Shown: positions 1 to 52,010 of the stretch, one piece after another
Layout of the letters: the number at the start of each line of letters is the position of its first letter
How positions within the stretch are numbered: the first letter of the stretch is position 1
Assembly: GCA_950097015.1 (NCBI GenBank)
Contig: CATNEN010000001.1
Location: 17,050,001 to 17,114,000, forward strand
Length of the DNA: 64,000 nt
Direction: 5' to 3'
Source of the DNA: Macrostomum hystrix
Lineage: Eukaryota > Animalia > Platyhelminthes
Program-made: the position numbers and the translations under genes
The notes under the pieces: model-generated
Told to the model about the DNA's origin: nothing
The model's database searches: none
Seen by the model: only the letters and a program-made list of their open reading frames with translations

Positions 1-3000
1 GGAGGCGGTTTCTTTGACTCCAGCTTCGAGTCGGACACCTACACTGACACGGCCAACGAGTCAGCTGCGGTTGCCGCCGCTGCAGCCACAGCAGCCGCTC
101 TGGCCGCTTCAAAGCCGTCTCGTTTCGGCTTCCTAAGAACCGGATTGTCTCTGTACAGGCAGCAGCAGCAAGCGTCAATAAATCAGCGAGTTAATCGATG
201 CTATTCAACGCCAAGCGACACTGATTTGGCCGCAGCCGCGGTGGCAGCGGCCGCCGGTGCGTCATCGCGCAACGAGGACCTACTGGCGTTGCCAAGGGAG
301 GAGCTGATCCGGCTTGTGCGGGAGATGCGCGCTAGGGTTGGCCAGACCTCCGCTAGGCTGGTCAGGGAGCTCAAGAGGCGAGATCATCGGCTGGCTAGGC
401 TGCAGAAGAATTGCGACCTGCTCACTGCGGCTCTGCAGGCTGCGAGTCAGAAGAGAAGTGAGTGCCCACTCAGTGCTCATTACTCAGCAGTCTTTTCTGA
501 GAGGTCATGGCTCGTTCTATTCAAAGGTCGCGGCTAATACTATTGAGATATCATGGCTCATTAATGAGTGCTTATGGCTCATTGGGTAAGGTAGTAGTGA
601 CTCATTCAATTAAGAGATCAATGCTCATGAGTCATCACGGCTCATTAATGAGTGTTCATGGCTCATTAATTAGTGGTCATGGCTTGTTGATGAGTGGTCA
701 TTGCTCATTAATGAGTGGTCATTGCTTATTGTTGAGTGGTCATTGCTCATTAATGAGTGGTCATTGCTTATTGTTGAGTGGTCATTGCTCATTAATGAGT
801 GGTCATTGCTTATTGATGAGTGGTCATGGCTCATTAATGAGTGGTCATTGCTTATTGATGAGTGGTCATGGGTCATTAATGAGTGGTCATTGCTTATTGA
901 TGAGTGGTCATGGCTCATTAATGAGTGGTCATTGCTTATTGATGAGTGGTCATGGGTCATTAATGAGTGGTCATTGCTTATTGATGAGTGGTCATGGGTC
1001 ATTAATGAGTGGTCATTGCTTATTGATGAGTGGTCATTGCTCATTAATGAGTGATGATGGCTCATTCAGTGAGACCTGGTAGGGGTCGTGCAGTGGCTCA
1101 TTAGTTAGAGGTCATGGCTCATTCATCAAGCGGTCATTGTTCTTTCAAAGAGACATTATGGTCATGCCTTTTTAGGTATTGGTAACTTAATTTTGTTTTA
1201 TTTAAATGGGAAGTTTTTAAATACTTAAGATTTACTTGCATTTAAAGTACAAATGTGAAGGAAATGATACAAAAAGTTTGATCCTACCATTAATATTCCA
1301 GGAAATTTTGCCAGCTAAAGCTTAATCTAGCAAACATTTTTCTTAAAACGGTAAAACTAATCACTTTGACCCCCTATATATCTTTAATGTCGTAAACTTT
1401 TTTTCTAGATGTTGTTAAAACCAAATAGTGCATGATTTTCATATCATTTTGTCTCATTATTAATTTTCGTGTTGTGTCTACCTGTTTTGGATGTATGACA
1501 AAAGTTTTAGCAGATAAGAGACAAAGATGTCAATCAAAGCTTGCTACACACATTGGCTTGCATGTTGTCGTAGCTTTGTACGTACTCATGTTGTAGTCCA
1601 AGTTTTATTCTAGCACAGAACCTTGAGTATGTAATTGCAATGCTACATGAGTTTTTTATTTTTTTTGCACCGAGACTCTGCAATGTTTTGTGACATTGGG
1701 TGCCTGTGTCTGTTTGTCTGTCTGCCTGCCAGCAAACGTTCTTTAATTGACCGTGACCTGTGTCACTATCACAGAGTAAGAGAATATATTACCTCTTTCC
1801 TTTTATAGATCCTCACGCTCGTATTAGGGGATTTCTGTCCTCAATAATTGATGCGTTGTTTGTTTTAGTGAATCCCCGTTCTAAATCCTAGATAGACATT
1901 CTCACACTCACCTTCACACATTCCCACAACACATTCTCGTATCACACTAACAGACATTCACACTAATATACATTCACACTAACAGACATTCACACTAACA
2001 GACATTCACACTAACAGACATTCACACTAACAGACATTCATTCTAACAGACATTCACAATAACAGACATTCACACTAACAGACATTCACACTAACACACA
2101 TTCACTCACTAACACACATTCACACACATTCACTCACTAACACACATTCACTCACTCACACACATTCACTCACATTCACTCACTCACACACATTCACTCA
2201 CTAACACACATTCACTCACTCACACACATTCACTCACATTCACTCACTAACACACATTCACTCACTAACACACATTCACTCACTAACACACATTCACTCA
2301 CTAACACACATTCACTCACTAACACACATTCACTCACTAACACACATTCACTCACTAACACACATTCACACACATTCACTCACTAACACACATTCACTCA
2401 CTAACACACATTCACTCACTCACACACATTCACTCACTCACACACATTCACTCACTAACACACATTCACTCACTAACACACATTCACTCACTCACACACA
2501 TTCACTCACATTCACTCACTAACACACATTCACACACTAACACACATTCACTCACTAACACACATTCACTAACATACATTCATTCTAACAGACATTCACA
2601 CTAACAAACATTCACAATAACAGACATTCACACTAATAGACATTCACACTAATAGACATTCACACTAACAGACATTCACACTAACAGACATTCACAATAA
2701 CAGACATTCACACTAACAGACATTCACAATAACAGACATTCACACTAACAGACATTCATTCTAACAGACATTCACACTAACAAACATTCACTATAACAGA
2801 CATTCACACCAACAGACAGTCACACTAACACACATTCACACACATTCACTCACTAACACACATTCACTCACTCACACACATTCACTCACATTCACTCACT
2901 CACACACATTCACTCACTAACACACATTCACTCACTCACACACATTCACTCACATTCACTCACTAACACACATTCACTCACTAACACACATTCACTCACT

Positions 3001-6000
3001 AACACACATTCACTCACTAACACACATTCACTCACTAACACACATTCACACACATTCACTCACTAACACACATTCACTCACTAACACACATTCACTCACT
3101 AACACTCATTCACTCACTCACACACATTCACTCACTAACACACATTCACTCACTAACACACATTCACTCACTAACACTCATTCACTCACTCACACACATT
3201 CACTCACTAACACACATTCACTCACTAACACACATTCACTCACTAACACACATTCACTCACTCACACACATTCACTCACTAACACACATTCACTCACTCA
3301 CACACATTCACTCACTAACACACATTCACTCACTAACACACATTCACTCACTAACACACATTCACTCACTAACACACATTCACTCACTAACACACATTCA
3401 CTCACTAACACACATTCACTCACTAACACACATTCACACACATTCACGCATTCTATGACAAGCACGCTGAAACTATGACAACCACCCTCACCCACGCGTG
3501 CACTGATTGGCTCAGCTGGTTATAGAGTGTGCAAAGTTGCTCGCTATACAGCATTCCATTCGCCTATTGTATAGCCATTTAGTTTCTAGCCAAAGCTTTA
3601 TGACAGAGAGGCACAACTTAACAGCCAGTACAAATGCTATTTAATAATTCTTGAAAAGTGGAATCTCTTATAAACTATAGAAAGCCTTTAAGTGTCTTGC
3701 CTGTGGTTGGCGGTAAGCTATAGATTCGACCTTTATCTGTTATCATCCAGTTGCGCTTTTTTGCTATTAGTTATCCGAGTACAGTTTAATTCCCCTACTC
3801 AGTTTCCCCCTTCCTCTCGTTCGAGCAGTCTATATTTGGATGTCCCATGTCTGTTTCCCCTCTGCTCACTGGATCCTCTGCTCAGTTCAATCCAGTTGTT
3901 ATCCCTCTATACTGCTTGAGTACAGTCAGCTAATTCGGCATCTCCATCCGAGTACATCCAGTATTGATCTCCTCTGGTTGAGTAGCCTCCTGCCTCTTTT
4001 CCTGTTTCTTCTGACTCTGAAATCCCTATACAGCATCTCCCCAAAAGCGTGGGTGAGTGGCAAGCCAGTGGAGACTTTGCAGCTCAGCCTCGACCCCTGC
4101 TCCAACCAATCCCCTGAATCTAAAAATAATCCTCACCCGTAGGGGCGGAGGCTGCACTTCTACTTCTTCTCTTCCTCTCTCCCTCTCTCCCTCTCTCCCT
4201 CTCGCGGCGCAAAGCATAATAATATCTACGTCACACAGTTGGTTTCCCTACTCAAGCATCATCCCAACCTAGAGAATCTGCTTTTTTATTGTCCAGAACT
4301 TCAAAAGTTTCATCTGAAAGTACAGATTTATAGAATGGCTACAGTCAGTGGTTTAACTAGTTCCCCATCGATGCCATTGATCCAATGCTCGGATAGCCAT
4401 TTAACTAGTCCTCAGAGAAATAGGAGATTTATTCAGCAGCAGCAGCAGCAGCAGCAGCACAGTTCTGAGTCATCGAATCGTGCCGTATTGGCCGATAATT
4501 TGAGAAAACTTCGCTCAAACACTCAGCGACTGCAGCTGCAGAGGCAAGACGGCTGCTTAGCTAGTTTGACAGGAGGCAAATCTCAAACCATTCTGGTGTC
4601 AGGTAAAATTTACTCATGTTCATTTATTGATTTTCAGTACGTTGTATGTAAGATCAGGTTCTCAAACTGTGTTCATGGGTAGTTTTGAATAAGTCGTTAC
4701 TTTCGTTCAGTTTTTTTCCCAAACTGTACTCATCGGTAGTAAAGAATAAATCGTTACTTTCATTCAGATTCTTCTCAAACTGTACTCATCGGTACTTTAG
4801 AATAAATCGTTACTTTAATGCAGTTACTTTGCAAACTGTACTCATCGGTAGTTTAGAATAAATCGTTACTTTAATGCAGTTACTTTGCAAACTGTACTCA
4901 TCGGTAGTTAAGAATAAATCGTTACTTTTATTCAGTTTCTTCTCAAACAGTACTCATCGGTAGTTAAGAATAAATCGTTACTTTTATTCAGTTTCTTCTC
5001 AAACAGTACTCATCGGTAGTTAAGAACAAATCGTTACTTTAATGCAGTTTCTTCTCAAACAGTACTCATCGGTAGTTAAGAATAAATCGTTACTTTTATT
5101 CAGTTTCTTCTCAAACAGTACTCATCGGTAGTTAAGAACAAATCGTTACTTTAATGCAGTTACTTTTCAAACAGTACTCATCGGTAGTTAAGAATAAATC
5201 GTTACTTTAATGCAGTTTCTTCTCAAACAGTACTCATCGGTAGTTAAGAACAAATCGTTACTTTAATGCAGTTACTTTTTAAACTGTACTCATCGGTAGT
5301 TAAGAATAAATCGTTACTGTCCCGACTAATTTGTCTAGAAGCAAACTGAAATCATCACTGACCTAGTAGAAATCGTTACTTTTCTCTTATTCGTTGTCAA
5401 ACTGTACTTCTCAGTAGCCTAGAATGAAATCGTTACTTTTTGCGATAAGTCTAATTAAGTGGAAAAGTAACTTATATTTGTACCGCAATCGCCTACGCCA
5501 GTAATTTTATATGAATTCTTTAACGCGGTTTTTTCTGTCGCGTCATTCGTGTTTCTAATATTTTAGTTGCCATTAAAATATTTTAGCTCGTAAATTTATT
5601 CTCTGCTCATCTGTTTATTGTCTCCCAGTCTTTCTTCTGTTCGAAAGATAAATAGAAATTCTCTAACAACCGAAAACTTCTTACCTCGGCTGAGTGTGTG
5701 TGCACCTGTGTGACATTGCGCTGTTCTGGCTTCCAAACTATCGCCTCTTTTTGTCTTCTTGGCTTTGCTGCTTTTTATTTTCTGGAAGCTGTGCTCAGCT
5801 CAGTTTGATGTGTGTTTGCTTATTGGCACACGCGGCACGTGTCTTTTCACTGCTACGTGCTCAAAGATTGTTTCTGTGCTGATGATTTTGAGTTCGCAAG
5901 CTGGCCTGTATGGCCACTGGAGATTGCCTGACAAGCTAGAAATCAGAAGCTTATCAGAAAGTATCAATTCAAACTAGATCCAATCGTCAGGTGGTGAGTG

Positions 6001-9000
6001 GCAGACCGGTCTGCCTCCCGCAACAATGTCCCTTAGCTCGATTCCGCGGCGAGGCCACATTCATTTATATTCAAGGGGCAATTTACGCCCTTTGAGGGAC
6101 AACCTCCAAGGCACAGTGAGAGTGTACACTGCCTGACGATGAGAATGTCCGGGCAGATGTACACACCTGTGTGAGCTTGTGCTCAGGAGTCCAGCGGAAT
6201 GGGCAGAATTGCCTCCTCGCTGGCTGCGGGTCTAGTGCCACCAAATGGTGTGCCATTGCCAGCAGCCCTCCTGAAATTATTATTATATAAAATCCAATCG
6301 TCTAACAATTATTCAGGCCAGGATGCCAAGCTCAAATTCACAATCGAACCGCGTCCCGGCGAGGAGGCCTTCAATCAGTGGCGCGACGGCATGCGGGCAG
6401 TGGCCAGACTGCCCAACGGCATTCCCGTGGAGTTTCGAAGAAAGGTTTGTTGCCCCATTCTTTTCATGTCTACATTTGGGATGTTTGCATGTAGAATTGG
6501 GATTTCCCGAGATTTGGCTTATATTAGATTGGTATTATCTTCGACTAGGATTATCGTAGGTTGGTATAATCTTCGACTAGGATTATCGTAGATTGGTATA
6601 ATCTTCGACTAGGATTATCGTAGATTGGATTAATCTTCTACTAGGATTATCGTAGATTGGTTTAATCTTCGACTAGGATTATCGAAGATTGGTTTTATCT
6701 TCGAATAGGATTATCGTAGATTGGTATAATCTTCGACTAGGATTATCGTAGATTGGTTTAATCTTCTACTAGGATTATCGAAGATTGGTTTAATATTCGA
6801 ATAGGATTATCGAAGATTGGTTTATTCTTCGAATAGGATTATTGTAGATTGGTATAATCTTCGACTAGGATTATCGAAGATTGGTTTAATATTCGACTAG
6901 GATTATCGTAGATTGGTTTAATCTTCGACTAGGATTATCGTAGATTGGTATAATCTTCGACTAGGATTATCGTAGATTGGTATAATCTTCGACTAGGATT
7001 ATCGTAGGTTGGGATAATCTTCTACTAGGATTATCGTAGATTGCTATAATCTTCGACTAGGATTATCGTAGATTGGTATAATCTTCGATGGATTATCGTA
7101 GATTGGGATAATCTTCGACTAGGATTATCGTAGATTGGTATAATCTTCGACTAGGATTATCGTAGATTGGTATAATCTTCGACTAGGATTATCGTAGATT
7201 GGTATAATCTTCGACTAGGATTATCGTAGATTGGTTTAATCTTCGACTAGGATTATCGTAGATTGGTATAATCTTCGATGGATTATCGTAGATTGGGATA
7301 ATCTTCGACTAGGATTATCGTAGATTGGTATAATCTTCGACGGATTATCGTAGATTGGTTTAATCTTCGAATAGGATTATCTTACATTCGTATTATCTTA
7401 GATTAGGATTTAAAAAAAATATTTTTCAAAGTGAAATCCTTTAAATCTTAACCCACCTGGCCAGGTGTGGCTGTCCCTAGCTGAGTTTTACCTGGCCTCG
7501 CAGCGTCTCGATTGGCAAAGAATTCGCAAGCTGTGCTTCAACGATCGACTGAATCCGGACGATGACTCGCTGGACCATCAGATTGTGAAGGATTTGCACC
7601 GCACGGGCTGCGAGGAATTCGGCTCCGAGCACGATAGAGCTGTGCTCAAACGCGTCCTGCTGGGTACGCGTGCTCAAACTGCGCTCATCAATGAGAAATC
7701 AGTACTTATTTCCTAGGCAGCAAAAGAGAAATCGTTACTTATCTCCTAAGTAGCCAAGGAGAAATCGTTACTTATCTCCTAAGTCGCCAAAGAGAAATCG
7801 TTACTTATCTCCTAAGTAGCCAAGGAGAAATCGTTACTTATCTCCTAAGTCGCCAAAGAGAAATCGTTACTTATTTCCTAGGCAGCAAAAGAGAAATCGT
7901 TACTTATTTCCTAGGCAGCAAAAGAGAAATCGTTACTTATCTCCTAAGTCGCCAAGGAGAAATCGTTACTTATCTCCTAAGTCGCCAAGGAGAAATCGTT
8001 ACTTATCTCCTAAGTCGCCAAGGAGAAATCGTTACTTATCTCCTAAGTCGCCAAGGAGAAATCGTTACTTATCTCCTAAGTCGCCAAGGAGAAATCGTTA
8101 CTTATCTCCTAAGTCGCCAAGGAGAAATCGTTACTTATCTCCTAAGTCGCCAAGGAGAAATCGTTACTTATCTCCTAAATCGCCAAGGAGAAATCGTTAC
8201 TTATCTCCTAAGTCGCCAAAGAGAAATCGTTACTTATCTCCAAAGTAGCCAAGGAGAAATCGTTACTTATTTCCTAAGTCGCCAAAGAGAAATCGTTACT
8301 TATCTCCTAAGTAGCCAAGGAGAAATCGTTACTTATCTCCTAAGTCGCCAAAGAGAAATCGTTACTTATTTCCTAGGCAGCAAAAGAGAAATCGTTACTT
8401 ATTTCCTAGGCAGCAAAAGAGAAATCGTTACTTATCTCCTAAGTCGCCAAGGAGAAATCGTTACTTATCTCTTAAGTCGCCAAGGAGAAATCGTTACTTA
8501 TCTCCTAAGTCGCCAAGGAGAAATCGTTACTTATCTCCTAAGTCGCCAAGGAGAAATCGTTACTTATCTCCTAAGTCGCCAAGGAGAAATCGTTACTTAT
8601 CTCCTTTCTGTTCTTAAATGGTGTCTTTCTGTCCTTTAAGGATGTCTTTCTGTCTTTTAAGGATGTCTTTCTGTCCTTTTAAGGATCCCTTTTTGGAGTC
8701 TTTCTGGTGTACTATTGCGACATATTTTTTTCGAGGTTCTTTTTCGGTTTTCAAGTTTCAAAATATTCACAATATCCCGCCAAATCCTCCAGCCTACGCC
8801 CGTTGGAACAAGCGGGTCGGCTACTGCCAGGGCTTCAACGTGTTGGCCGCTCTCATCCTAGAAGTGATGGAACGCAACGAAGACGAGGCATTGAAGGTCA
8901 TGATCTTTCTGGTTGACAGCTGCCTACCCGAGAGCTACTTTGCACAGAACCTGCAAGCTCTCACAGTTGACATTGCCGTGTTCCGCCAGCTACTCCGAGC

Positions 9001-16881: not shown

Positions 16882-19800
16882 ATGAATATTGACGCTCTAA
16901 AAGTAGCTGATTTAAGAGAAGAATTAAAGAAGCGAAATCTTTCAACAAAAGGTCTTAAAGCAGAGTTAACGCAAAGATTAAAAGATGCCATTCAAAAGGA
17001 ACAGCTATCTGATGGTAAGAGTTAGCTAGCTATTACTACCAGCTGATATTTGTTTACAAAAAGTGACTATATTATAGCATAACGCCTACATTTTTACACT
17101 TTGTGGACTATTTTTTTTCTAACAGAAGAAAATGCTTTGACTTTTTTTCAAATACATACACTTTATCATTTACCATGTTATGATATTAGTTGACAAAGTG
17201 ACATAAGTAGGCTTATGTCTGTTTGTAAAGGCTGAAATTTTCATATTCTAAATCTAAATTGTCATATCTATTTAGATTCAAACCTTTTTATTTTCCTTAA
17301 GCGGAATCTCCCAGAAACATGTTTCTCTAATGTACCCCCTTTATGCATTTCAGATGGCTTTTGCAATTGACTGTAAATAGTAAATTGATATCTATACAAC
17401 GTCTATTTGTTAAGCTATGGAATAGGTATAGCTTTGCCACTTCTTTAAAGCCAAAAGAGTTATATATTGTAAACAAATAAACATGTCTTGTCAGCATAGT
17501 AATCCTATTCCTATTCAATGTAAAAAACGAAATTTAATACTTTAATAAATGAGTGTTAATAAAAGATATTTTAATTCCATAGTGTAGATAAAAAATGACC
17601 TATATGCTTTTGGAATCTTTCAATTCCATAAAAAAAATAAATTAGTTATTGCAATATTTTTGTTTTCCAAGTCAAATCCATCCTGTCATCTAGATCACAG
17701 CCCCTTAAGGGAAAAATACATTACAAAAAAACTATTTTAATGTTGATTAAAAAAGTTTTATAACTTTTTTATTACCTGACCAATTTTGATGAGTGAGGTG
17801 AACTCGGACAAGCAAGATCTGTAATACAAGAAAACCAAAAATATGAATTTTAAAAATTAATAACTGGAGCCCCTCGCATAATTTTGAAAAGTTGTCCTCT
17901 TTGTGGTTTTTAATTCATGCAATTGTTTTGGTAGCTGGCCATTTCAGACAACCATTTCAGCCTCAAACAAATTTACCTACTTGTAAAGTAATATAAAATG
18001 TTAGGGTAATGTATCATCAACCAAACAAGAATGTGTATTTTTTAACTTAAAACCTAAGCTACAGATTTTCTATTTAAGATATGATGATAAATCAAAAGCC
18101 AAGTTATAGAAAACAGTTACATCTTTCTAAAAAGTATCTGCTTTTGCTATTTTATCATATAGAAAAAAGTTATTTCTGCTTTTTATCTAAAACCGAACAA
18201 TGATTTTCATGTATCTTCAAACCAAACAGAGAATTTGATGTTTGGTTTTACAATTTGAGTGAGTGGTTTAATCTTATTTTAAGGAGTGAACTATCAAGAA
18301 TTATGTAATTTGAAAGCATTTTTCATGCTCTATAAATAACTACATTTATGGTCATTTAATTGGCAGGCAACCACATACAATCTTTGTCTAAAGTACATAC
18401 AGAAAATTTTTTGTTAAAAAGTATGCTTTTGCAATAAAAATTTCTATTAAAACATCAATATCTTTCTTTCCTCTTAATGCTTCATTGCACATCATGCCTC
18501 AGCTTGTAGATAATTTCTTCAACTTTCAAATTAGTTGTTCTGTGAAACACAATAGCTTGTTTCTGTCTTGCACGAGACCAAGGAAGAAGTCAAAATTCTT
18601 GTTCGGTTTTGAAGATACACTGTTCGGTTGATGATACATTACCCTATCTCTATTAAAAAACTTAAACTTAAAAAATTTAAAAATAAATTAAATTTAATAT
18701 AATATTTGTTTAAAACATTTTTATTTGACTTCTTATTAGGAAAGTAGTTCCTAATCTTAAAATACATTTTTTTAGATATTAAAATCTATATTTGCAAGTG
18801 TTTGCGCTGTGCAGAACTAGATGTTATATCTCTTAAATAATGTGTTATATAAAAAAGTGATTAATCACAATGATTAAGTGTGCATTGATAAAAAACTGAT
18901 TATTTAATTATTGAGATTATATATTATATATTGAGGATATAATATTAATATATATTGTTATAGCATGCCACTGTATAGTATTTTTATCTATACTTTTTTA
19001 TTCTATTTTTTATTACCAACCAGCATATTCAGACAGAAAGTCCAATAATATCCACTTGTACTACTTCTCTTATAACTAGCTAAGCACAAGTGATTTAACT
19101 TGTAAAACTAACATTTTCATTAATTGTTTTTAGTTTTTTATTACTGCCCATGCTTATGCATTATTAGTTAAAGTAAAAATAGCTACATAAAATCCTTCAT
19201 AAATTAAAGTTTTATTATATACAATTTCTTCTGAAAAGGATGTAGCCATCCAGTAAGTATTTAACATTTTCAATGGAGCTCTAATTATTTTGTATCATTT
19301 CCTTGTGAAATAGTGATTCTACTATCTATACCAATTTCCTTTCTGCAATATTTAGGCCAGGCACCAGCAGCACCTGCTCCTGACATCGATGCTCTGCCAC
19401 CTGACGATTCCGCTGGCGATGCTGCCCTGTCAGCTGATGACACATCTGTTTGTTTGACACAATCTGAACAAGTGACCGCTGAAGAGAATGGAGGTGTCAG
19501 TGACCCTGTAAGTTGGTATAAATATCACTTAAAATATTGATCGTGTAAAGTGTCTGTTGATTTCATGAAACAATTGTACTTATCCTTTTTCTTTAGGCTC
19601 TGCTGCAGCCTATTGAAACACTTCAACAAACAGAAGATAAACCAGAGCCTACTCCAGAACCTGTTCAACCGCAACTGGAAGCCACACCAGAACCTGTTCA
19701 ACCAGAAGCCACTGCTGAACCTGTTCAACCAGAAGCCACACCAGAACCTGTTCAACCGGAAGCCACTGCTGAACCTGTTCAACCGGAAGCCACTGCTGAA

Positions 19801-22800
19801 CCTGTTCAACCGGAAGCCACTGCTGAACCTGTTCAACCGGAAGCCACTGCTGAACCCGTTCAACCGGAAGCCACTGCTGAACCTGTTCAACCGGAAGCCA
19901 CTGCTGAACCCGTTCAACCTGAAGCCACTGCTGAAACTGTTCAACCGGAAGCCACTGCTGAACCTGTTCAACCGGAAGCCACTGCTGAACCTGTTCAACC
20001 GGAAGCCACTGCTGAAACTGTTCAGCCGGAAGCCACTGCTGAACCTGTTCAGCCGGAAGCCACTTCTGATCCTGCTCAACTGCCTGAGCCAATGCAAGCA
20101 GAACAGGGTCCGGAATCGCAGGCCAAACAGGCTAAGCAGGATTCTCCGAAATTGGAAAACAAAGAAGACAACTCAGCTATCGCTTTGTCTAAAACTGAAG
20201 AGAAGGATCAGACAGAACCAGCGGCTGTAGCTCCGTCAGATTCTTCGTCTCCCCAGAGGAAGCGCCGACATCGCAGTCCGTCCCCGTCTGGCAGTCATCA
20301 TCAGCATCCGGAGCAGGAGCAGCAGGATGGCAAGCGATCGCGAACTACAGCTTCGGCCTCGTCGTCAACTGCCGGCTCCACTTCGCGGCATCATCATCAC
20401 GGCGGAGGCGGCGGCAGCAGCAGCCGGCATCATCGCAGCCGTCGATCTCGTTCGCGTTCTCGCTCCCGGTCTCGTTCGGCCCGATCCCGTTCGCCCGCTA
20501 GCGGAGCTGCCGCCGCAGCTGGTGCTGCCGGCTCTTCCTCCGCTGGCAACGACGCTATTGAAGCCGAGATCGCCGACATGCTGGGACCGGAGCCAGCCGG
20601 TTGGGAGTTGGACCAGCAGTCCAAGCCGCGCCTAGATCCCTATCATTGCGATCTGCATCTGAAGGTCGGCTGGCCAGATCGCCTGCACGCCAGGCCCGTG
20701 GCTGATGAAGGCTTCGCATTCTGTTGGGCTGGCGGTCGGGCTACGCACGGCGTGGCTCACGGCTCCGCCCAGCTGCAGCGCCCGCTGCGAGTCTGGTACG
20801 AAGCCAAAGGCACTAAGAAGGTGGAGGATGTTCGACTTCCCAGTGGAGAACCGGACAGTTGCGCTATTAGATTCGGCTGGATGGCCGACGGTGTTGGCAC
20901 CGATTTTCAGCTGGGTAAGTTTTCAAACTCATGTAGGTAGTCCGGAGTTCGATTCTCCGCCTTTTTGGCTCCGCTTAAATGACCGGTGATAATAAATGTC
21001 CGCAGGTGAGGCGCCTAATTCCTACGGCTACGAGAGTACAGGAAAGCGATGCGCCAATGGCATATTTGAAAAATACGCGGCTCCATTCGCCATCGGAGAT
21101 GTCATCACCTGCTACGCTGTAAGTTGATTGATTTTAAACACAATCCTTATTTATATTCGGCTTCTAAAATAAATGATGAAAAATTGAGACAAACTTCAGA
21201 GCGTTGGACATTGTCCTACGCTTTGTGATTGACACGTGCTTAATCTTTTCTGATCGATTTTAACATTTTTTCTGTACATGCATGCTACTTAGAATGACAT
21301 AGTTTTTTCATTAAAACCTGGCAATTTTTCTTAATGATGAAAACATATGACAAGTGAAGGTACGCCTTATGATTGACATGTGCTTAATCTTTTCTGATAA
21401 GAAAATCATTGCCAATTCATAATTGTAGACTATTTTTGTTTCTTAGTTAAGCAGCTTATTATATTAATGATGAAACTAACACGGACTAGAGTCTCAGAAC
21501 TCTACTTTATGATTGACAATTATTTGCTTCCGTTTCTGAACAAGCTGCTAGAAAATATTATATGGATTGTCATATTATAGTATTCCATACTATTAGGTAC
21601 ATATTTGTTGTTTATAGTCAGGCAAAATATGATGAAACCTACACGGACTAGAGTCTCAGAACTCTACTTTATGATTGACAATTATTTGCTTCCGTTTCTG
21701 AACAAGCTGCTAGAAAATATTATATGGATTGTCATATTATAGTATTCCATACTATTAGGTACATATTTGTTGTTTAAAGTCAGGCAAAATATGATGAAAC
21801 CTACACGGACTAGAGTCTCAGAACTCTACTTTATGATTGACAATTATTTGCTTCCGTTTCTGAACAAGCTGCTAGAAAATATTATATGGATTGTCATATT
21901 ATAGTATTCCATACTATTAGGTACATATTTGTTGTTTAAAGTCAGGCAAAATATGATGAAATCTACACGGACTAGAGTCTCAGAACTCTATTCATGATCG
22001 ACAATTATTTGCTTCCGTTTCTGAACAAGCTGCTAGAAAATATTATATGGATTGTCATATTATAGTATTCCATACTATTAGATACATATTTGTTGTTTAA
22101 AGTCAGGCAAAATATGATGAAACCTACACGGACTAGAGTCTCAGAACTCTATTCATGATCGACAATTATTTGCTTCCGTTTCTGAACAAGCTGCTAGAAA
22201 ATATTATATGGATTGTCATATTATAGTATTCCATACTATTAGGTACATATTTGTTGTTTATAGTCAGGCAAAATATGATGAAATCTACACGGACTAGAGT
22301 CTCAGAACTCTATTCATGATCGACAACTATTAGCTTCCGTTTCTGATCCGCTAATATAGATTATGAATTTATGCCATGGAGTTTCGTATGTTAGTAGAAC
22401 AATAATCGTTTCCTTTATCGCAGGACTATCCAGCTGACACAGATCTAGTCTATCTGTCATTCGCTGTCAATGGTAGCTATCAGGGCGCCGCATTCGCTGT
22501 CAAACTGCCAGCAGTGGACGAGGCTAATGTGTCCGCTACAGCTTTGTACCCGTGCGTACTAGCCAAGAACCTAGCCTTCGCTGTACAGTTTGGCTTCTCG
22601 GCTACCACAGGCGAAGAATCCTATTGGTTTCAACCGCCGCCAGTAAATATTACCGATTCCGGCACTGAAGATGCGGCCATTGTTGAAGAAGCATCCGAAT
22701 CTGAAGCCGAGCCTCGATTAGAGCCTCGTCCATTGGATTATAAGCTTCCTAGTGATGACTGGCTCAGCATGGCCCAGCTGATGCAAGCTAGGCCAAACTG

Positions 22801-25372
22801 TTTAGTCCGAGCTTGTCTTCCGCCGGCTTCCAAATCCGACTGCGAAGTTATCCTCATGGTTGGACTGCCCGGCGCCGGCAAAACTCATTGGGTTAGGCAG
22901 CATTTGGCTGAGAATCAGGATAAGCGCTACACTATACTGGCTAGCTATGCCGTGCTGGACAAGATGAGTGTGAGTTGAGCAATTCTGTAACTTGCTTCTA
23001 GTTGCTTTTCTTTTACAAGTTGTTACCCCAAATTCTGATCTTATCTTATCTTCTGATCCGGAAATCCCAAATCCTCATATTGTTCCATTATTAAAAAATC
23101 CCATTTCCCACCCGCAGGTATCCGGCAAGTCCAGACGGGATCTCACCCAGCCGCATCGTTGGCAACTGTTTCCTCAGCGTGCTACAGCCTGTGTGGCCAC
23201 TCTCTGCAAATTAGCCTCACTGCGACGCAGAAACTACATCATCGATTTGGTGAGTTGCTTATATTTTTTCTCGTGTTAAAGCAAGTTAATAATCCCAATA
23301 GTGTTTTATTGAGCCGGATTTTCCTATTTCCAAGAAGCAGCCCAGCGAGACCACTTTCTTTAATTAGGATGGAGTGATTTCTCCCAGTTTACTAATCCCC
23401 CGTAATGCAATCGCTCATTGATAAGCTGCGGAGTCGACCATTTACTCCAAGCCAGGTATATCCCATATTTAATTATCCCCTATCGTATGTTAATTGCTTC
23501 TGAACTTACAGCAAATCTACGCGTCACTGTGCAGAGAGAATTGCTTTTTTATTTAACGGACAGGACAAGCTAAAACTACAAAGGTTCAGATACCGTTTGG
23601 AAATTTCCCAGTGCCCAGATCCCCAAAGATACCCACAGCAAATGGAGAAAAAGAGACGCAGACGACACAAGGGCAGCGTGTGGCCAACTAAATCGCGCAT
23701 AATTGATTCATCGTTCGCTCCCCTCTCCCATTTTTTTCTCCACTCCACAACTGTCCATGATCTCCCCCGACCTGACCTGTGATGACCAATGCTAAAGACC
23801 AACGTTGTGCCAGCGGGCCAGTCGCAGCGAATTCGCCCATTCGCCGGCTTTAAACGCCGGGCTGTCGTTATTGTGCCGCCCAATGAGGAGGAATCGGTCA
23901 GGCGCGCCAGTCTGCCGCGCGTTAAAGAAGTCGGAAAGGAGGTAGCCGACAACGACCTGCTAGAGATGAAAGGTTTCTGCCCAACTGTTTGATTCTGCTT
24001 GTCATTATTTTACAGTATCTTTGTGCTCACACATTTTCTAACGCGGTAGAAACTTGCCTGAACTGAAATGCCTATTTTAATTTGCTCAGTTGATTATCTA
24101 TTTAATTATATTGATCTATCGATGCTCACTTGAATCAAATCTGACATCACTTTCCCCCCTTCCCCTCAAAAACACAACTCCGAACACCCGCACTACTCAG
24201 CCAAATTCGCGGTGCCCAGCTCCGATCTTATCGACGAGTTCATCTTTCCTGAGCTACCCGAAGCCGAGGCTCGCCTAGCTGTAGCCCAGTACAATCGCGA
24301 GGGCGGCCAGTCTGCTGCTTCAAATAGCTCCGCTTCGCGTTCCCGCGTCGGCTCCAGGTTCGATAACGACGACGGTGGAGATGCCGATCGTCAGCCGAGG
24401 CGACCTGGCGGCGATAACAGAGACCGGGACCGCGACAGGGATCGGGATCGCGACCGGGACAGGGACAGGAATCGAGACCGGGATCGCGATCGTGACAGAG
24501 ACCGCGACCGGGACAGAGACCGAGACCGCGACCGGGATCGTCAGGGTGGTCGCCGCGGCTTTGATCGCGGCTACAATCGCGACTTCCGCGGCGGCGGTGG
24601 TGGCGGCTTGGGTCGCGGCGGCGGCGGAGGGGGATTCGGTCGCGGGTTCGGCGATCAAGGTCGATTCGGTGGCGGTGGCGGCGGAGGTAGATTCGACCGA
24701 GGCGGAGGCGGTGGTGGCATCGGCGCCGGTTTTGGCGGTCGCGGAGGAGGAGGCTTCGGCGGTGGTGGCGGAGGAGGCGGCAGACGCGACAATGATCGAT
24801 TTAGCGGTGGAGGCCATCGGGACGATCGCAACCGCCGCTCTGGTGGATTCGGTGGCGGAGGCGGAGGCGGCAGCTTCAATCAGCACCGGGCTCCAGTGGC
24901 GGACCTGATGCAGCAGCAGGTCCAGCCGCTTTTGCCGCCTTCGCACGGCTCCAGTTGGGGTGGCAGCGGAGGCGGAGGTGGTCGTTACGGCGGACGAGGC
25001 AGCAGCGGTGGCGGAGGCAGTCGGTTTGGCAGCGGTGGCGGTCAGCCTCCAGTGCCTCAGCTGGCCTCCCTTGTGCCGCCGCCACCTCCGCAGCAGCTGC
25101 AGCAGCCATCGTTGTCTCATCTGGGAGTTGCGGCTCTGGCAGCCCAGCCGCCGCCGCCGCCTCCCCTGCCACCGGTGCATCATCAGCTGCAGACGCATCG
25201 TATGCCGCCACCGCCTCCACCGCCTGCGGCCATGCAGCAGCCGCAGTTTCAGCAGTTCCCGCAGTACCAGCAGCAGCCTACAGCCTGGCCTAGTATCGAT
25301 CACCAGCATCAGTCTGCTGGCTTTGGTCAGCAGCAGCAGCAGCAGCAGCAGCAATGGCCAGGTGGTTACTGA
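16882..25372 (+). CDS. HNRNPUL1: hnRNP U-like protein (SAP, SPRY/B30.2, P-loop, RGG, P/Q-rich tail). Exons 16882-17014, 19356-19507, 19597-20914, 21006-21118, 22424-22969, 23118-23249, 23798-23972, 24201-25372
   Basis: SAP-like LKVADLREELKKRNLSTKGLKAELTQRL; SPRY-like LDPYHCDLHLKV, WAGGRATHGV, QLGEAPNSYGYESTGK, GDVITCY; Walker A VILMVGLPGAGKTHW; RRRNYIIDL-TNV; RGG repeats. Phases agree across all introns. Paralog assignment (U, UL1 or UL2) is uncertain. Confidence 0.88.
18004..18644. mobile_element. MITE with ~24-bp TIRs and TA flanks (possibly Tc1/mariner-pogo type)
   Basis: GGGTAATGTATCATCAACCAAACA ... TGTTCGGTTGATGATACATTACCC, TA on both sides, internal copies of the TIR motif near 18190, 18211 and 18600. 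Confidence 0.75.
19630..20065 (+). repeat. Coding 27-bp minisatellite (EPVQPEATA)n in hnRNPU-like exon 3
   Basis: In frame with exon 19597-20914. Confidence 0.85.
21173..21253 (+). ncRNA. Intronic box C/D snoRNA candidate A
   Basis: C box ATGATGA at 21173, D' CAGA, internal hairpin AGCGT-GGACA/TGTCC-ACGCT, C' GTGATTGA, D box CTGA at 21250-21253. Guides TTGAGACAA and GCTTAATCTTT are antisense to the conserved 18S 5' sequence UUGUCUCAAAGAUUAAGC. Confidence 0.8.
21334..21397 (+). ncRNA. Intronic box C/D snoRNA candidate B
   Basis: C box ATGATGA, D' GTGA, hairpin AAGG-TACG-CCTT, C' ATGATTGA, D box CTGA. Long terminal stem TGGCAAT.TTTTCTTA / TAAGAAAA..ATTGCCA. Guides CATATGAC and GCTTAATCTTT are antisense to the 18S 5' end. 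Confidence 0.85.
21467..22346 (+). ncRNA. Tandem array of six box C/D snoRNA candidates (family C): 21467-21539, 21629-21701, 21791-21863, 21953-22024, 22114-22185, 22275-22346
   Basis: Each copy is ATGATGA...ATGAT(T/C)GAC...TTCTGA, 72-73 nt, with a 161-162 bp period. Copy 1 has terminal stem AGCAGCTT/AAGCTGCT. Same scaffold as candidates A and B. Confidence 0.78.
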
Positions 25373-51707: not shown

Positions 51708-52010
51708 GCAGAGGTTGTAGCCTAGTGGTTAGGGCGTCGGACTCACGACTTGAAGGTCGGGGGTTCGATTCCCGACTCCACTGGAAAAATTTGCGTCCTT
51801 TAGCAAGACACTTAACTCTGCATTGCTTCAGTTCACCCAGCTGTTAAATGGGTACCAGCATCAGCTGGGATAATTGAAGGTGGGTGTGGCGTCCCCCCAG
51901 TCCGTGGTCTGAACAGCTGTACGCAGCCTTCAGATGCGCCGCGCATTAGCTGCGGCTGTGCTGTCGGCTGCACATCTGACCCAATTGGGGCAGGTGTAAT
52001 CAATTCAATT
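51708..52010 (+). mobile_element. tRNA-derived CORE-type SINE, family 2
   Basis: tRNA-like head with A box TAGCCTAGTGG and B box GGTTCGATTCC, CORE-like GTCCTTTAGCAAGACACTTAACTCT..CACCCAGCTGTTAAATGGGTACC, flanked by (TATC)n on both sides. Confidence 0.8.

What the first reader, a model, noticed from the sequence alone, without database searches (positions are those of the whole stretch)
21119..22423. Eight box C/D guide RNA candidates with one scaffold and different guides in a single intron
Seen: hnRNPU-like intron 4 (1.3 kb) holds eight units of ATGATGAAA-[guide 1]-D'-hairpin-RTGATYGAC-[guide 2]-TTCTGA, starting at 21173, 21334, 21467, 21629, 21791, 21953, 22114 and 22275, mostly about 161 nt apart. 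The boxes are constant while the guides fall into three families. Established: C (RUGAUGA) and D (CUGA) boxes define fibrillarin/Nop56/Nop58/15.5K snoRNPs; animal intronic snoRNAs usually occur one per intron and are released by debranching and exonucleolytic trimming, while intronic clusters are better known in plants. Inference: this is a polycistronic guide array that needs endonucleolytic cuts between units and is diversifying guides by tandem duplication.
Basis: partly seen in the sequence, partly recalled or inferred. Interest (0 to 1): 0.9.

Follow-up and report, generated by a model that had tools for sequence, protein, structure and literature searches.

The report
Flatworm intronic box C/D snoRNA array
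One intron of a flatworm hnRNPU-like gene carries eight sense-strand box C/D guide-RNA genes: six near-identical copies of the well-known SNORD52/snR78 type and two older paralogues aimed at the 5' end of 18S rRNA. This is a real but fairly ordinary snoRNA cluster, and its expression and processing could not be tested here.

Summary
**Observation: confirmed.**
- Intron 21119-22423 (+) lies in a SAP-SPRY-P-loop (hnRNPU-like) gene of a Macrostomum flatworm; the assembly statistics fit M. hystrix.
- It holds eight units built as C box - guide - D' - C' - guide - D box, at the stated starts.
- There are only three kinds. u3-u8 are a 162-bp tandem repeat, 95-100% identical including the spacers.

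**Guides.**
- The D' guide of u3-u8 matches the Rfam SNORD52 consensus over 12 nt (GACUAGAGUCUC). It pairs 12 Watson-Crick bp with the genome's own 28S and predicts Um2744, by guide identity the site of human U3904; yeast snR78/U2421 from memory. Anchored shuffles give p~0.001.
- These six are the only such guides in the 220-Mb genome.
- u1 and u2 share a D guide that pairs 11 bp with 18S 39-49 (predicted Gm42, p~0.009, no known counterpart).

**Specificity.** A strict C/D-plus-rRNA-guide scan of both strands of the window returns only these eight units.

**Interpretation: partly supported.**
- These are very probably real snoRNA genes made by local tandem duplication with guide turnover.
- The need for endonucleolytic cuts is untested. 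Spacers show no significant structure and u4-u7 lack terminal stems. snoRNA-ended long RNAs or silent copies remain open.

**Context.** The scan has noted other snoRNA arrays on other DNA of this genome. I confirmed one of them, 0.77 Mb away.

**Verdict:** new member of a known kind.

The parts
21119..22423 (+). Host intron (1305 nt) of the SAP-SPRY-AAA_33 (hnRNPU/SAF-A-like) gene. It starts GTAAGT and ends CGCAG.
   Evidence: Sequence. tblastn of M. lignano P0001/P0151 is colinear across 21118|22424. Pfam finds SPRY and AAA_33 on the flanking exons, and SAP+SPRY+AAA_33 on the orthologue.
21173..21253 (+). u1, 81 nt. C box 21173-21179; D'-like CAGA 21197-21200; internal hairpin 21200-21222; C'-like GTGATTGA 21225-21232; D guide GCTTAATCTTT 21238-21248; D box 21250-21253. 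A weak AU terminal stem TAAAAT/ATTTTA flanks it.
   Evidence: (fold z -3.2). The D guide pairs 11 WC bp with SSU 39-49. The 5' element TTGAGACAA pairs with SSU 32-40.
21334..21397 (+). u2, 64 nt. C box 21334-21340; C'-like ATGATTGA 21369-21376; D guide 21382-21392; D box 21394-21397. The D' box is uncertain (GTGA 21354-21357). A 15-bp terminal stem abuts both boxes (about 21319-21333 with 21398-21414).
   Evidence: Terminal duplex -14.4 kcal/mol, 0/500 shuffles. The 3' half is 25/26 identical to u1. Best Rfam hits are all sub-threshold C/D families.
21467..21539 (+). u3, SNORD52-type, 73 nt. C box 21467-21473; D' guide CGGACTAGAGTC 21482-21493; D' CAGA 21495-21498; C'-like ATGATTGA 21509-21516; orphan D guide; D box 21536-21539. 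External stem AGCAGCTT (21447-21454) with AAGCTGCT (21542-21549).
   Evidence: External stem -12.8 kcal/mol, reached by 1% of shuffles.
21629..21701 (+). u4, SNORD52-type copy (a-subtype), with the same layout as u3.
21791..21863 (+). u5, SNORD52-type copy. Its snoRNA body and spacer are identical to u4.
21953..22024 (+). u6, SNORD52-type copy (b-subtype: 1-nt deletion, C' ATGATCGA).
   Evidence: (SNORD52 alignment, 18.9 bits).
22114..22185 (+). u7, SNORD52-type copy (b-subtype).
22275..22346 (+). u8, SNORD52-type copy (b-subtype). It has two changes in the D-guide region. Its D box ends 77 nt upstream of the 3' splice site.
21467..22346 (+). 162-bp tandem repeat (snoRNA body of about 73 nt plus spacer of about 88 nt), 5.5 copies, 98% matches.
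   Evidence: TRF. BLAST within the genome finds only these copies.

Best explanation
The intron carries a locally amplified family of box C/D snoRNA genes that are transcribed as part of the host pre-mRNA.

**SNORD52/snR78-type units (u3-u8).** These six units are orthologues of SNORD52/snR78. Their D' guide (CGGACUAGAGUC, then one nt, then CAGA) places fibrillarin on U2744 of the flatworm 28S rRNA. By guide identity this is the conserved E-site-proximal U, equivalent to human U3904; equivalence to yeast U2421/snR78 is recalled, not tested. Their second (D) guide has no credible target.

**Older paralogues (u1, u2).** These come from the same ~161-nt unit. They kept the C, C' and D boxes but now carry a D guide complementary to 18S nt 39-49, which predicts Gm42. 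Their 5' elements are complementary to 18S 32-40 (u1) and 23-30 (u2).

**Release (inferred).** After splicing and debranching, exonucleases trim to the snoRNP-protected ends.
- u8 sits at the canonical ~75-nt distance from the 3' splice site.
- u2, u3 and, weakly, u1 have terminal or external stems that could support splicing-independent assembly.
- Separating the internal units requires either cleavage in the spacers or some other route.

**What is shown.** The anatomy, the guide complementarity, the uniqueness in the genome and the duplication history.

**What is inferred.** Expression, snoRNP assembly, the methylations and the processing route.
For: - **Architecture.** All eight units have the full box layout on the host's sense strand.
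- **Specificity.** The scaffold is unique to this locus in 220 Mb, with control 0. A strict snoscan-like scan of both strands of the window returns only these eight.
- **Guide identity.** The u3-u8 guide and its D' position are identical to the Rfam SNORD52 consensus over GACUAGAGUCUC, and to Tetrahymena TtnuCD15.
- **u3-u8 target.** 12 contiguous Watson-Crick bp to own LSU 2741-2752, anchored 1 nt from D'. Shuffles reach this 0/200 and 22/20000.
- **Sole copies.** These six are the only copies of this guide after a C box in the genome.
- **Wider family.** The same C-box + guide + D' signature is found in 59 metagenome loci. 45 of 49 distinct sequences have a D box and 32 have a terminal stem.
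- **Known targets.** SNORD52 guides human 28S U3904 (bioRxiv 10.1101/2022.09.24.509301). snR78 guides yeast Um2421 (PMC5699541).
- **u1/u2 target.** The D guide gives 11 anchored WC bp to SSU 39-49 (181/20000 shuffles). The 3' halves are 25/26 identical while the rest has diverged.
- **Stems.** u2 has a 15-bp terminal stem (0/500 shuffles) and u3 an 8-bp external stem (1%).
- **Position.** u8's D box ends 77 nt from the 3' splice site.
- **Host.** An hnRNP-type, presumably well-expressed gene.
Against:
- **No Rfam family reaches its gathering score.** SNORD52 scores 17-19 bits against a threshold of 45.
- **Weak assembly signals.** u4-u7 have no significant terminal or external stem, and the u3-u8 units do not fold better than shuffles.
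- **Non-canonical C' box.** It reads AUGAUYGA, with one extra nucleotide.
- **No sign of purifying selection in the young copies.** The spacers are at least as conserved as the snoRNA bodies, so extra copies may be silent.
- **u1/u2 guide is weaker evidence.** Under a lenient G-U-tolerant score, 10-12% of shuffles match it. Its predicted site (Gm42) has no known counterpart that I could find.
- **D' guides of u1/u2 are short.** They pair only 8-9 bp and carry mismatches next to the box.
Confidence: 0.75

Rival explanations
1. The array yields mainly snoRNA-ended long RNAs (sno-lncRNAs) rather than eight separate snoRNAs. Exonucleases would stop at the outermost assembled snoRNPs. An intron remnant of up to ~1.17 kb (21173-22346), or shorter versions between any two assembled units, would then accumulate.
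For: In animals, two snoRNAs in one intron processed by the normal debranching and trimming route give sno-lncRNAs (PMC11028025). The repeat spacers show no significant secondary structure that would mark cleavage sites (z +0.6). All units lie on one strand in one confirmed intron.
Against: No RNA data were available. u2 has a 15-bp stem that closes it off as an independent unit. Intronic clusters elsewhere (plants, Drosophila H/ACA) do yield individual snoRNAs (references cited). The two outcomes are not mutually exclusive.
Confidence: 0.1
2. Most tandem copies are neutral, recently amplified and copy-number-variable duplicates. They would be snoRNA pseudogenes or poorly processed copies. Only one or a few units (for example u8 near the 3' splice site, u3 with its external stem, and u2) would give functional snoRNA.
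For: u3-u7 are 95-100% identical including the spacers, and u4 equals u5, so there is no sign of selection on the copies. u4-u7 lack terminal or external stems. The ancestral external stem AGCAGCTT/AAGCTGCT survives only around u3. Tandem snoRNA arrays recur in this genome, which points to a mutational tendency.
Against: All copies keep perfect C, D', D boxes and guide 1. All 8 variable sites fall outside these elements. With so few differences this is weak evidence.
Confidence: 0.1
3. Each repeat is removed separately, by recursive splicing or cryptic micro-exons at the AG|GTACAT motif present in four of the five full spacers. This would restore 'one snoRNA per lariat' without any endonuclease.
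For: TATTAG|GTACAT lies 57 nt downstream of the D box in the spacers after u3, u4, u5 and u7. The scan has noted a snoRNA host elsewhere in this genome built from 'micro-exon + snoRNA' cassettes (s1-846784, untested lead).
Against: GTACAT is a poor match to the host gene's own 5' splice sites (GTAAGT, GTGAGT). The motif is mutated to AGAT in the spacer after u6. There is no such site between u1, u2 and u3. No junction reads were available.
Confidence: 0.04

Closest known systems
SNORD52 (vertebrates, Rfam RF00276) / snR78 (yeast) / TtnuCD15 (Tetrahymena)
   Same: u3-u8 share the same 12-nt antisense element (GACUAGAGUCUC) in the same position, directly upstream of D', after a canonical C box. 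The predicted target is the same conserved LSU uridine (human U3904; yeast U2421 from my own recollection).
   Different: The units score only 17-19 bits against the vertebrate-built Rfam model, whose gathering score is 45. D' is CAGA rather than CUGA. C' carries an extra nucleotide. There is no short terminal stem. Six tandem copies sit in a protein-coding host intron, instead of one copy in the non-coding SNHG32. Several metagenome and Tetrahymena relatives have a second guide (CCCUUGGCUGU type) that is not functional-looking here.
Intronic snoRNA gene clusters (rice box C/D clusters; Drosophila H/ACA intronic clusters)
   Same: Several snoRNA genes lie on the sense strand of one host intron, arise by tandem duplication and depend on host transcription (references; category defined in PMC11028025).
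   Different: In Drosophila and Bombyx, box C/D snoRNAs are reported as one per intron (PMC3089462). Here eight box C/D units share one intron of an animal protein-coding gene. The processing enzymes are unknown, and no spacer cleavage signal was found.
sno-lncRNAs and tandem SNORD115/116-type arrays of mammals
   Same: There are multiple near-identical C/D units in tandem. Two or more snoRNAs in one intron is the configuration that yields snoRNA-ended lncRNAs.
   Different: SNORD115/116 units normally sit one per intron of a repeated non-coding host, and they are orphan guides. Here the copies carry a canonical rRNA guide and share one intron. No long RNA has been observed.

Membership tests
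Box C/D snoRNA | C box RUGAUGA near the 5' end and D box CUGA near the 3' end, 60-100 nt apart | tested here: met
   All eight units have ATGATGA ... CTGA and are 64-81 nt long.
Box C/D snoRNA | Terminal or external stem bringing the C and D boxes together (k-turn stem I) | tested here: inconclusive
   u2 has a 15-bp stem (0/500 shuffles). u3 has an 8-bp external stem (1%). u1 has 6 A-U pairs only. u4-u7 have none above background. u8 is not significant (0.086).
Box C/D snoRNA | Internal D' and C' boxes | tested here: inconclusive
   D' is CAGA in u1 and u3-u8 and is uncertain in u2. C' reads RTGATYGA, one nucleotide longer than UGAUGA, and is conserved in all eight units.
Box C/D snoRNA | Antisense element of 10 nt or more, ending 1-2 nt upstream of D or D', complementary to rRNA or snRNA | tested here: met
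   u3-u8 give 12 WC bp to LSU 2741-2752 (p~0.001). u1/u2 give 11 WC bp to SSU 39-49 (p~0.009). The D guide of u3-u8 has no target in rDNA, U6 or U2.
Box C/D snoRNA | Stable 60-100-nt RNA bound by fibrillarin/Nop56/Nop58/Snu13, with the target nucleotide 2'-O-methylated | not testable with these tools
No RiboMeth-seq data are available.
SNORD52 / snR78 family | Guide to the conserved LSU uridine (human U3904; yeast U2421 from my own recollection) placed upstream of D' | tested here: met
   The cmscan alignment shows the guide identical to the SNORD52 consensus, with the same register to D'. The 5th-nucleotide rule gives U2744 in the genome's own LSU.
SNORD52 / snR78 family | Score at or above the Rfam gathering threshold (45 bits) | tested here: not met
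   Scores are 16.8-18.9 bits and nothing is reported at gathering. The model is built from vertebrate sequences. Homology therefore rests on the guide and its position, not on overall sequence.
Polycistronic intronic snoRNA cluster processed by endonuclease | Several snoRNA genes within one intron | tested here: met
   The orthologous protein is colinear across 21118|22424, with no exon in between.
Polycistronic intronic snoRNA cluster processed by endonuclease | Endonucleolytic cleavage in the spacers (for example an RNase III-type stem) | tested here: inconclusive
   The 87-nt repeat spacer folds no better than shuffles (z +0.6). Cleavage itself cannot be tested here.
sno-lncRNA | Accumulating intron-derived RNA with a snoRNP at each end | not testable with these tools
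   The precondition, two or more snoRNAs in one intron, is met. No RNA data are available.

The most novel reading that the evidence does not exclude
An animal protein-coding intron works as a true polycistronic box C/D unit. All eight units would be released as separate snoRNPs by a so-far unknown spacer cleavage activity in flatworms. The older units (u1, u2) would have acquired new guides that install lineage-specific methylations in the 5' end of 18S (Gm42, possibly Um32/Cm25). That would be a caught-in-the-act case of new rRNA modification sites arising by tandem duplication, in a genome where snoRNA arrays are pervasive.
Probability: 0.25. Interest if true: 0.55.

Novelty: new member of a known kind. 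Interest (0 to 1): 0.35.

Why it matters
The locus supplies what look like the only SNORD52/snR78-type guides of a model-flatworm genus, and snoRNAs are essentially unannotated there. It is also a clean example of how box C/D snoRNAs multiply by cis tandem duplication and then change guides. The young copies are identical, while the old copies keep only the boxes and a new 18S guide.

If the internal units are individually processed, the locus would be a compact system for asking how animals release snoRNAs from a multi-snoRNA intron. If they are not, it would be a non-mammalian source of sno-lncRNAs.

On its own, however, it is an ordinary class of RNA in a known type of arrangement.

Tried and rejected
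- **Orthologous loci.** The look-up of encoding contigs for the two M. lignano relatives was closed, so the orthologous intron could not be compared.
- **Rfam at gathering thresholds.** Nothing was found in the intron.
- **Metagenome scan, scaffold-specific pattern.** 0 hits. The broader pattern found 59 loci, none recognisably from a close relative.
- **Canonical U27-type guide.** A search elsewhere in the genome with one strict pattern gave 0 hits, which is not conclusive.
- **Rfam SNORD18 against the genome.** No match was found, and the controls also rang nowhere, so it is uninformative.
- **Targets for the orphan D guide of u3-u8 and for the D' elements of u1/u2.** Nothing above shuffle background was found in rDNA including spacers, U6 or U2.
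- **u1 as a relative of Drosophila Me18S-Um1356.** Rejected: the 21-bit hit rests on boxes and A/U-rich filler only, with no shared guide.
- **Chance tandem repeat with fortuitous boxes.** Rejected on guide identity to SNORD52 and on the genome-wide and window-wide controls.
- **A gene on the opposite strand.** No ORF and only insignificant Rfam hits.
Full report
**Organism and host gene**

The window is G000:C1:17050001-17114000 of a 220,453,370-bp assembly in 42 contigs. The exon downstream of the intron finds its only close relatives (65-66% identity) in Macrostomum lignano SAP/SPRY proteins. The published M. hystrix assembly is described as ~220 Mb in 42 contigs (PMC10468722). I therefore take the organism to be Macrostomum hystrix. 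That rests on matching assembly statistics and the nearest relatives, not on a named record.

tblastn of the M. lignano orthologues onto the window gives colinear exons at 16882-17001, 20548-20916, 21005-21118, 22424-22975, 23118-23270 and beyond. Residues 550|551 fall exactly at 21118|22424. Pfam gives SAP + SPRY + AAA_33 for the orthologue, and SPRY and AAA_33 for the flanking exons. The host is thus an hnRNPU/SAF-A-like gene. Positions 21119-22423 are a genuine single intron (GTAAGT...CGCAG). I did not verify that it is intron number 4.

**The observation**

Each has ATGATGAAA at the 5' end, an internal RTGATYGAC, and YCTGA 64-81 nt downstream.

TRF shows that 21467-22346 is a 162-bp repeat of 5.5 copies with 98% matches. 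Within the genome the repeat unit matches only itself at 89-100% identity. The u1-u2 segment is single-copy. The eight units therefore comprise three kinds:
- u1
- u2, whose 3' half is 25/26 identical to that of u1
- the six-copy family u3-u8, with an a-subtype (u3-u5) and a b-subtype (u6-u8)

Three controls show this is not chance:
- The scaffold pattern occurs in 220 Mb only at these eight units and one unrelated place. The reversed control gives 0.
- A strict scan of both strands of the 64-kb window returns only these eight. The scan required RTGATGA, then CTGA 45-125 nt later, then an exact 10-nt rRNA antisense word ending 0-3 nt from D or from an NNGA D'.
- 8 of the 17 RTGATGA motifs on the + strand lie in this intron.

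**What the units are**

No Rfam family reaches its gathering score. Every sub-threshold hit on the + strand is nonetheless a box C/D family.

*u3-u8.* All six units hit SNORD52 at 17-19 bits. The alignment shows why. The consensus ...CAGACUAGAGUCUCUGA... matches ...CGGACUAGAGUCUCAGA... in the units, in the same position after the C box, with D' in the same register. Tetrahymena TtnuCD15 shares the same element.

I took the organism's own 18S, ITS/5.8S and 28S from the rDNA. The element pairs 12 contiguous Watson-Crick bp with LSU 2741-2752. By the fifth-nucleotide rule it selects U2744. No shuffle out of 200 reached this score. In a stricter anchored test 22 of 20,000 did.

SNORD52 guides human 28S U3904, near the E site; knocking it out abolishes that methylation (bioRxiv 10.1101/2022.09.24.509301). 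snR78 guides yeast Um2421 (PMC5699541). The equivalence of U2744 to human U3904 is inferred from guide identity, not from an rRNA alignment. The link to yeast U2421 rests only on my recollection that snR78 is the SNORD52 homologue.

A C box followed by this guide occurs nowhere else in the genome. These six copies are therefore the only candidates for that conserved site.

The same C-box + guide + D' signature occurs in 59 metagenome contigs. Of 49 distinct sequences, 45 have a downstream D box and 32 have a terminal stem of 4 bp or more. Five contigs hold two tandem copies. The signature therefore marks a widespread snoRNA family that is prone to tandem duplication.

The second (D) guide of u3-u8 has no credible target in rDNA, U6 or U2. 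In u8 it weakly resembles the second guide of TtnuCD15 but is displaced from the D box.

*u1 and u2.* The shared D guide GCUUAAUCUUU, one nucleotide from CUGA, pairs 11 Watson-Crick bp with SSU 39-49 and selects G42.
- It is significant in the strict anchored test (181/20,000).
- It is only marginal under a lenient G-U-tolerant score, where 10-12% of shuffles reach it.

Their 5' elements pair with SSU 32-40 (u1, 9 bp) and SSU 23-30 (u2, 8 bp). Neither is significant alone. However, all three elements fall within 30 nt of a 9.8-kb target. By my own rough estimate this co-location is very unlikely by chance. An earlier first-reader note (s1-848339) made the same point.

I know of no methylation at the equivalent of 18S G42 in other organisms. 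That statement rests on my own knowledge and was not searched exhaustively.

u2 is closed by a 15-bp terminal stem abutting both boxes (0/500 shuffles). u1 has a strong internal hairpin (fold z -3.2) and a weak A-U terminal stem.

**History**

The C' variant RTGATYGAC is shared by all eight units and by nothing else in the genome. u1 and u2 are 161 nt apart, like the young repeat. Their spacer keeps faint similarity to the repeat spacer (z 2.7). The C, C' and D boxes are identical across the three kinds.

This fits repeated tandem duplication of a ~161-nt unit, followed by guide turnover in the older copies. That is the cis-duplication route known for C/D snoRNAs (PMC11028025).

Among the young copies there are 6 variable sites in the 75-nt body. 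All lie outside the boxes and guides. There are 2 variable sites in the 87-nt spacer. This shows recent duplication or gene conversion. It does not show selection.

**Processing**

u8 ends 77 nt upstream of the 3' splice site. From my own knowledge of mammalian work, this is the position classically favourable for splicing-coupled assembly. That has not been tested in flatworms.

u3 has a perfect 8-bp external stem (AGCAGCUU/AAGCUGCU, reached by 1% of shuffles). Its 3' arm is repeated after u3-u7, but its 5' arm exists only upstream of u3. u4-u7 have no stem above background. The repeat spacer folds no better than shuffles.

It has no direct support here.

Three alternatives remain open:
- snoRNA-ended long RNAs, which is what two snoRNAs in one intron produce in mammals
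- silent extra copies
- separate removal of each repeat at AG|GTACAT sites, the weakest of the three, because those sites are poor and one is mutated

**Context and novelty**

Box C/D snoRNAs are reported as one per intron in Drosophila and Bombyx, whereas Drosophila H/ACA snoRNAs form intronic clusters (PMC3089462). Intronic clusters are a recognised category, and rice has intronic clusters.

Earlier notes of this scan list several other snoRNA arrays on other DNA of the same genome. I checked one of them. It lies 0.77 Mb downstream on the same contig and contains at least nine tandem C/D units, all with the D' guide GATAGGGACA to LSU 2657-2666. Tandem snoRNA arrays are therefore a habit of this genome.

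The present locus is a new member of a known kind. It is a lineage-specific amplification of a conserved snoRNA plus two derived paralogues. It is unusual mainly in packing eight box C/D units into one intron of an animal protein-coding gene.

**Limits**

Noticed in passing
L014 (G000:C1:17883000-17890500), units at locus positions 990-6430, + strand: A second tandem array of at least nine box C/D units lies 0.77 Mb downstream of the window. There are several subtypes of 73-84 nt. All carry the D' guide GATAGGGACA to LSU 2657-2666.
   Followed up: partly
window 21486-21503 (and the same positions in u4-u8): In u3-u8 the D'-C' linker ACUCUA is complementary to the 3' part of guide 1 (UAGAGU). 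It forms a 6-bp hairpin with D' in the loop. The linker is in effect a copy of part of the rRNA target, so it could act as a self-masking or 'target mimic' element.
   Followed up: partly
window 21447-21454 versus 21542-21549, 21704-21711, 21866-21873, 22027-22034, 22188-22195: The single 5' arm AGCAGCTT upstream of u3 can pair perfectly with any of the five AAGCTGCT copies that follow u3-u7. In principle this allows alternative long-range stems that enclose 1-5 units.
   Followed up: no
window 19550-20100 (TRF 20000-20078 and upstream): A 27-bp tandem repeat lies in the long low-complexity exon region of the host gene. It encodes a 9-residue repeat (…EATAEPVQP…) in the host reading frame. It is followed by RS- and His/Gly-rich stretches.
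   Followed up: no
window 51711-51780 (+): This is the only Rfam match at gathering score in the whole window: a tRNA at 31.8 bits.
   Followed up: no
L015, L030, L044, L051, L073 (metagenome contigs): SNORD52-type snoRNAs (same C box + guide + D') occur as two tandem copies 130-540 nt apart in five unrelated environmental eukaryote contigs. Many relatives carry a second guide, CCCUUGGCUGU, next to the D box, which the flatworm copies lack.
   Followed up: partly
window 24212-25372 (+): The C-terminal exon of the host gene encodes long RD-dipeptide, Gly-rich (RGG-like) and Pro/Gln-rich low-complexity tracts.
   Followed up: no
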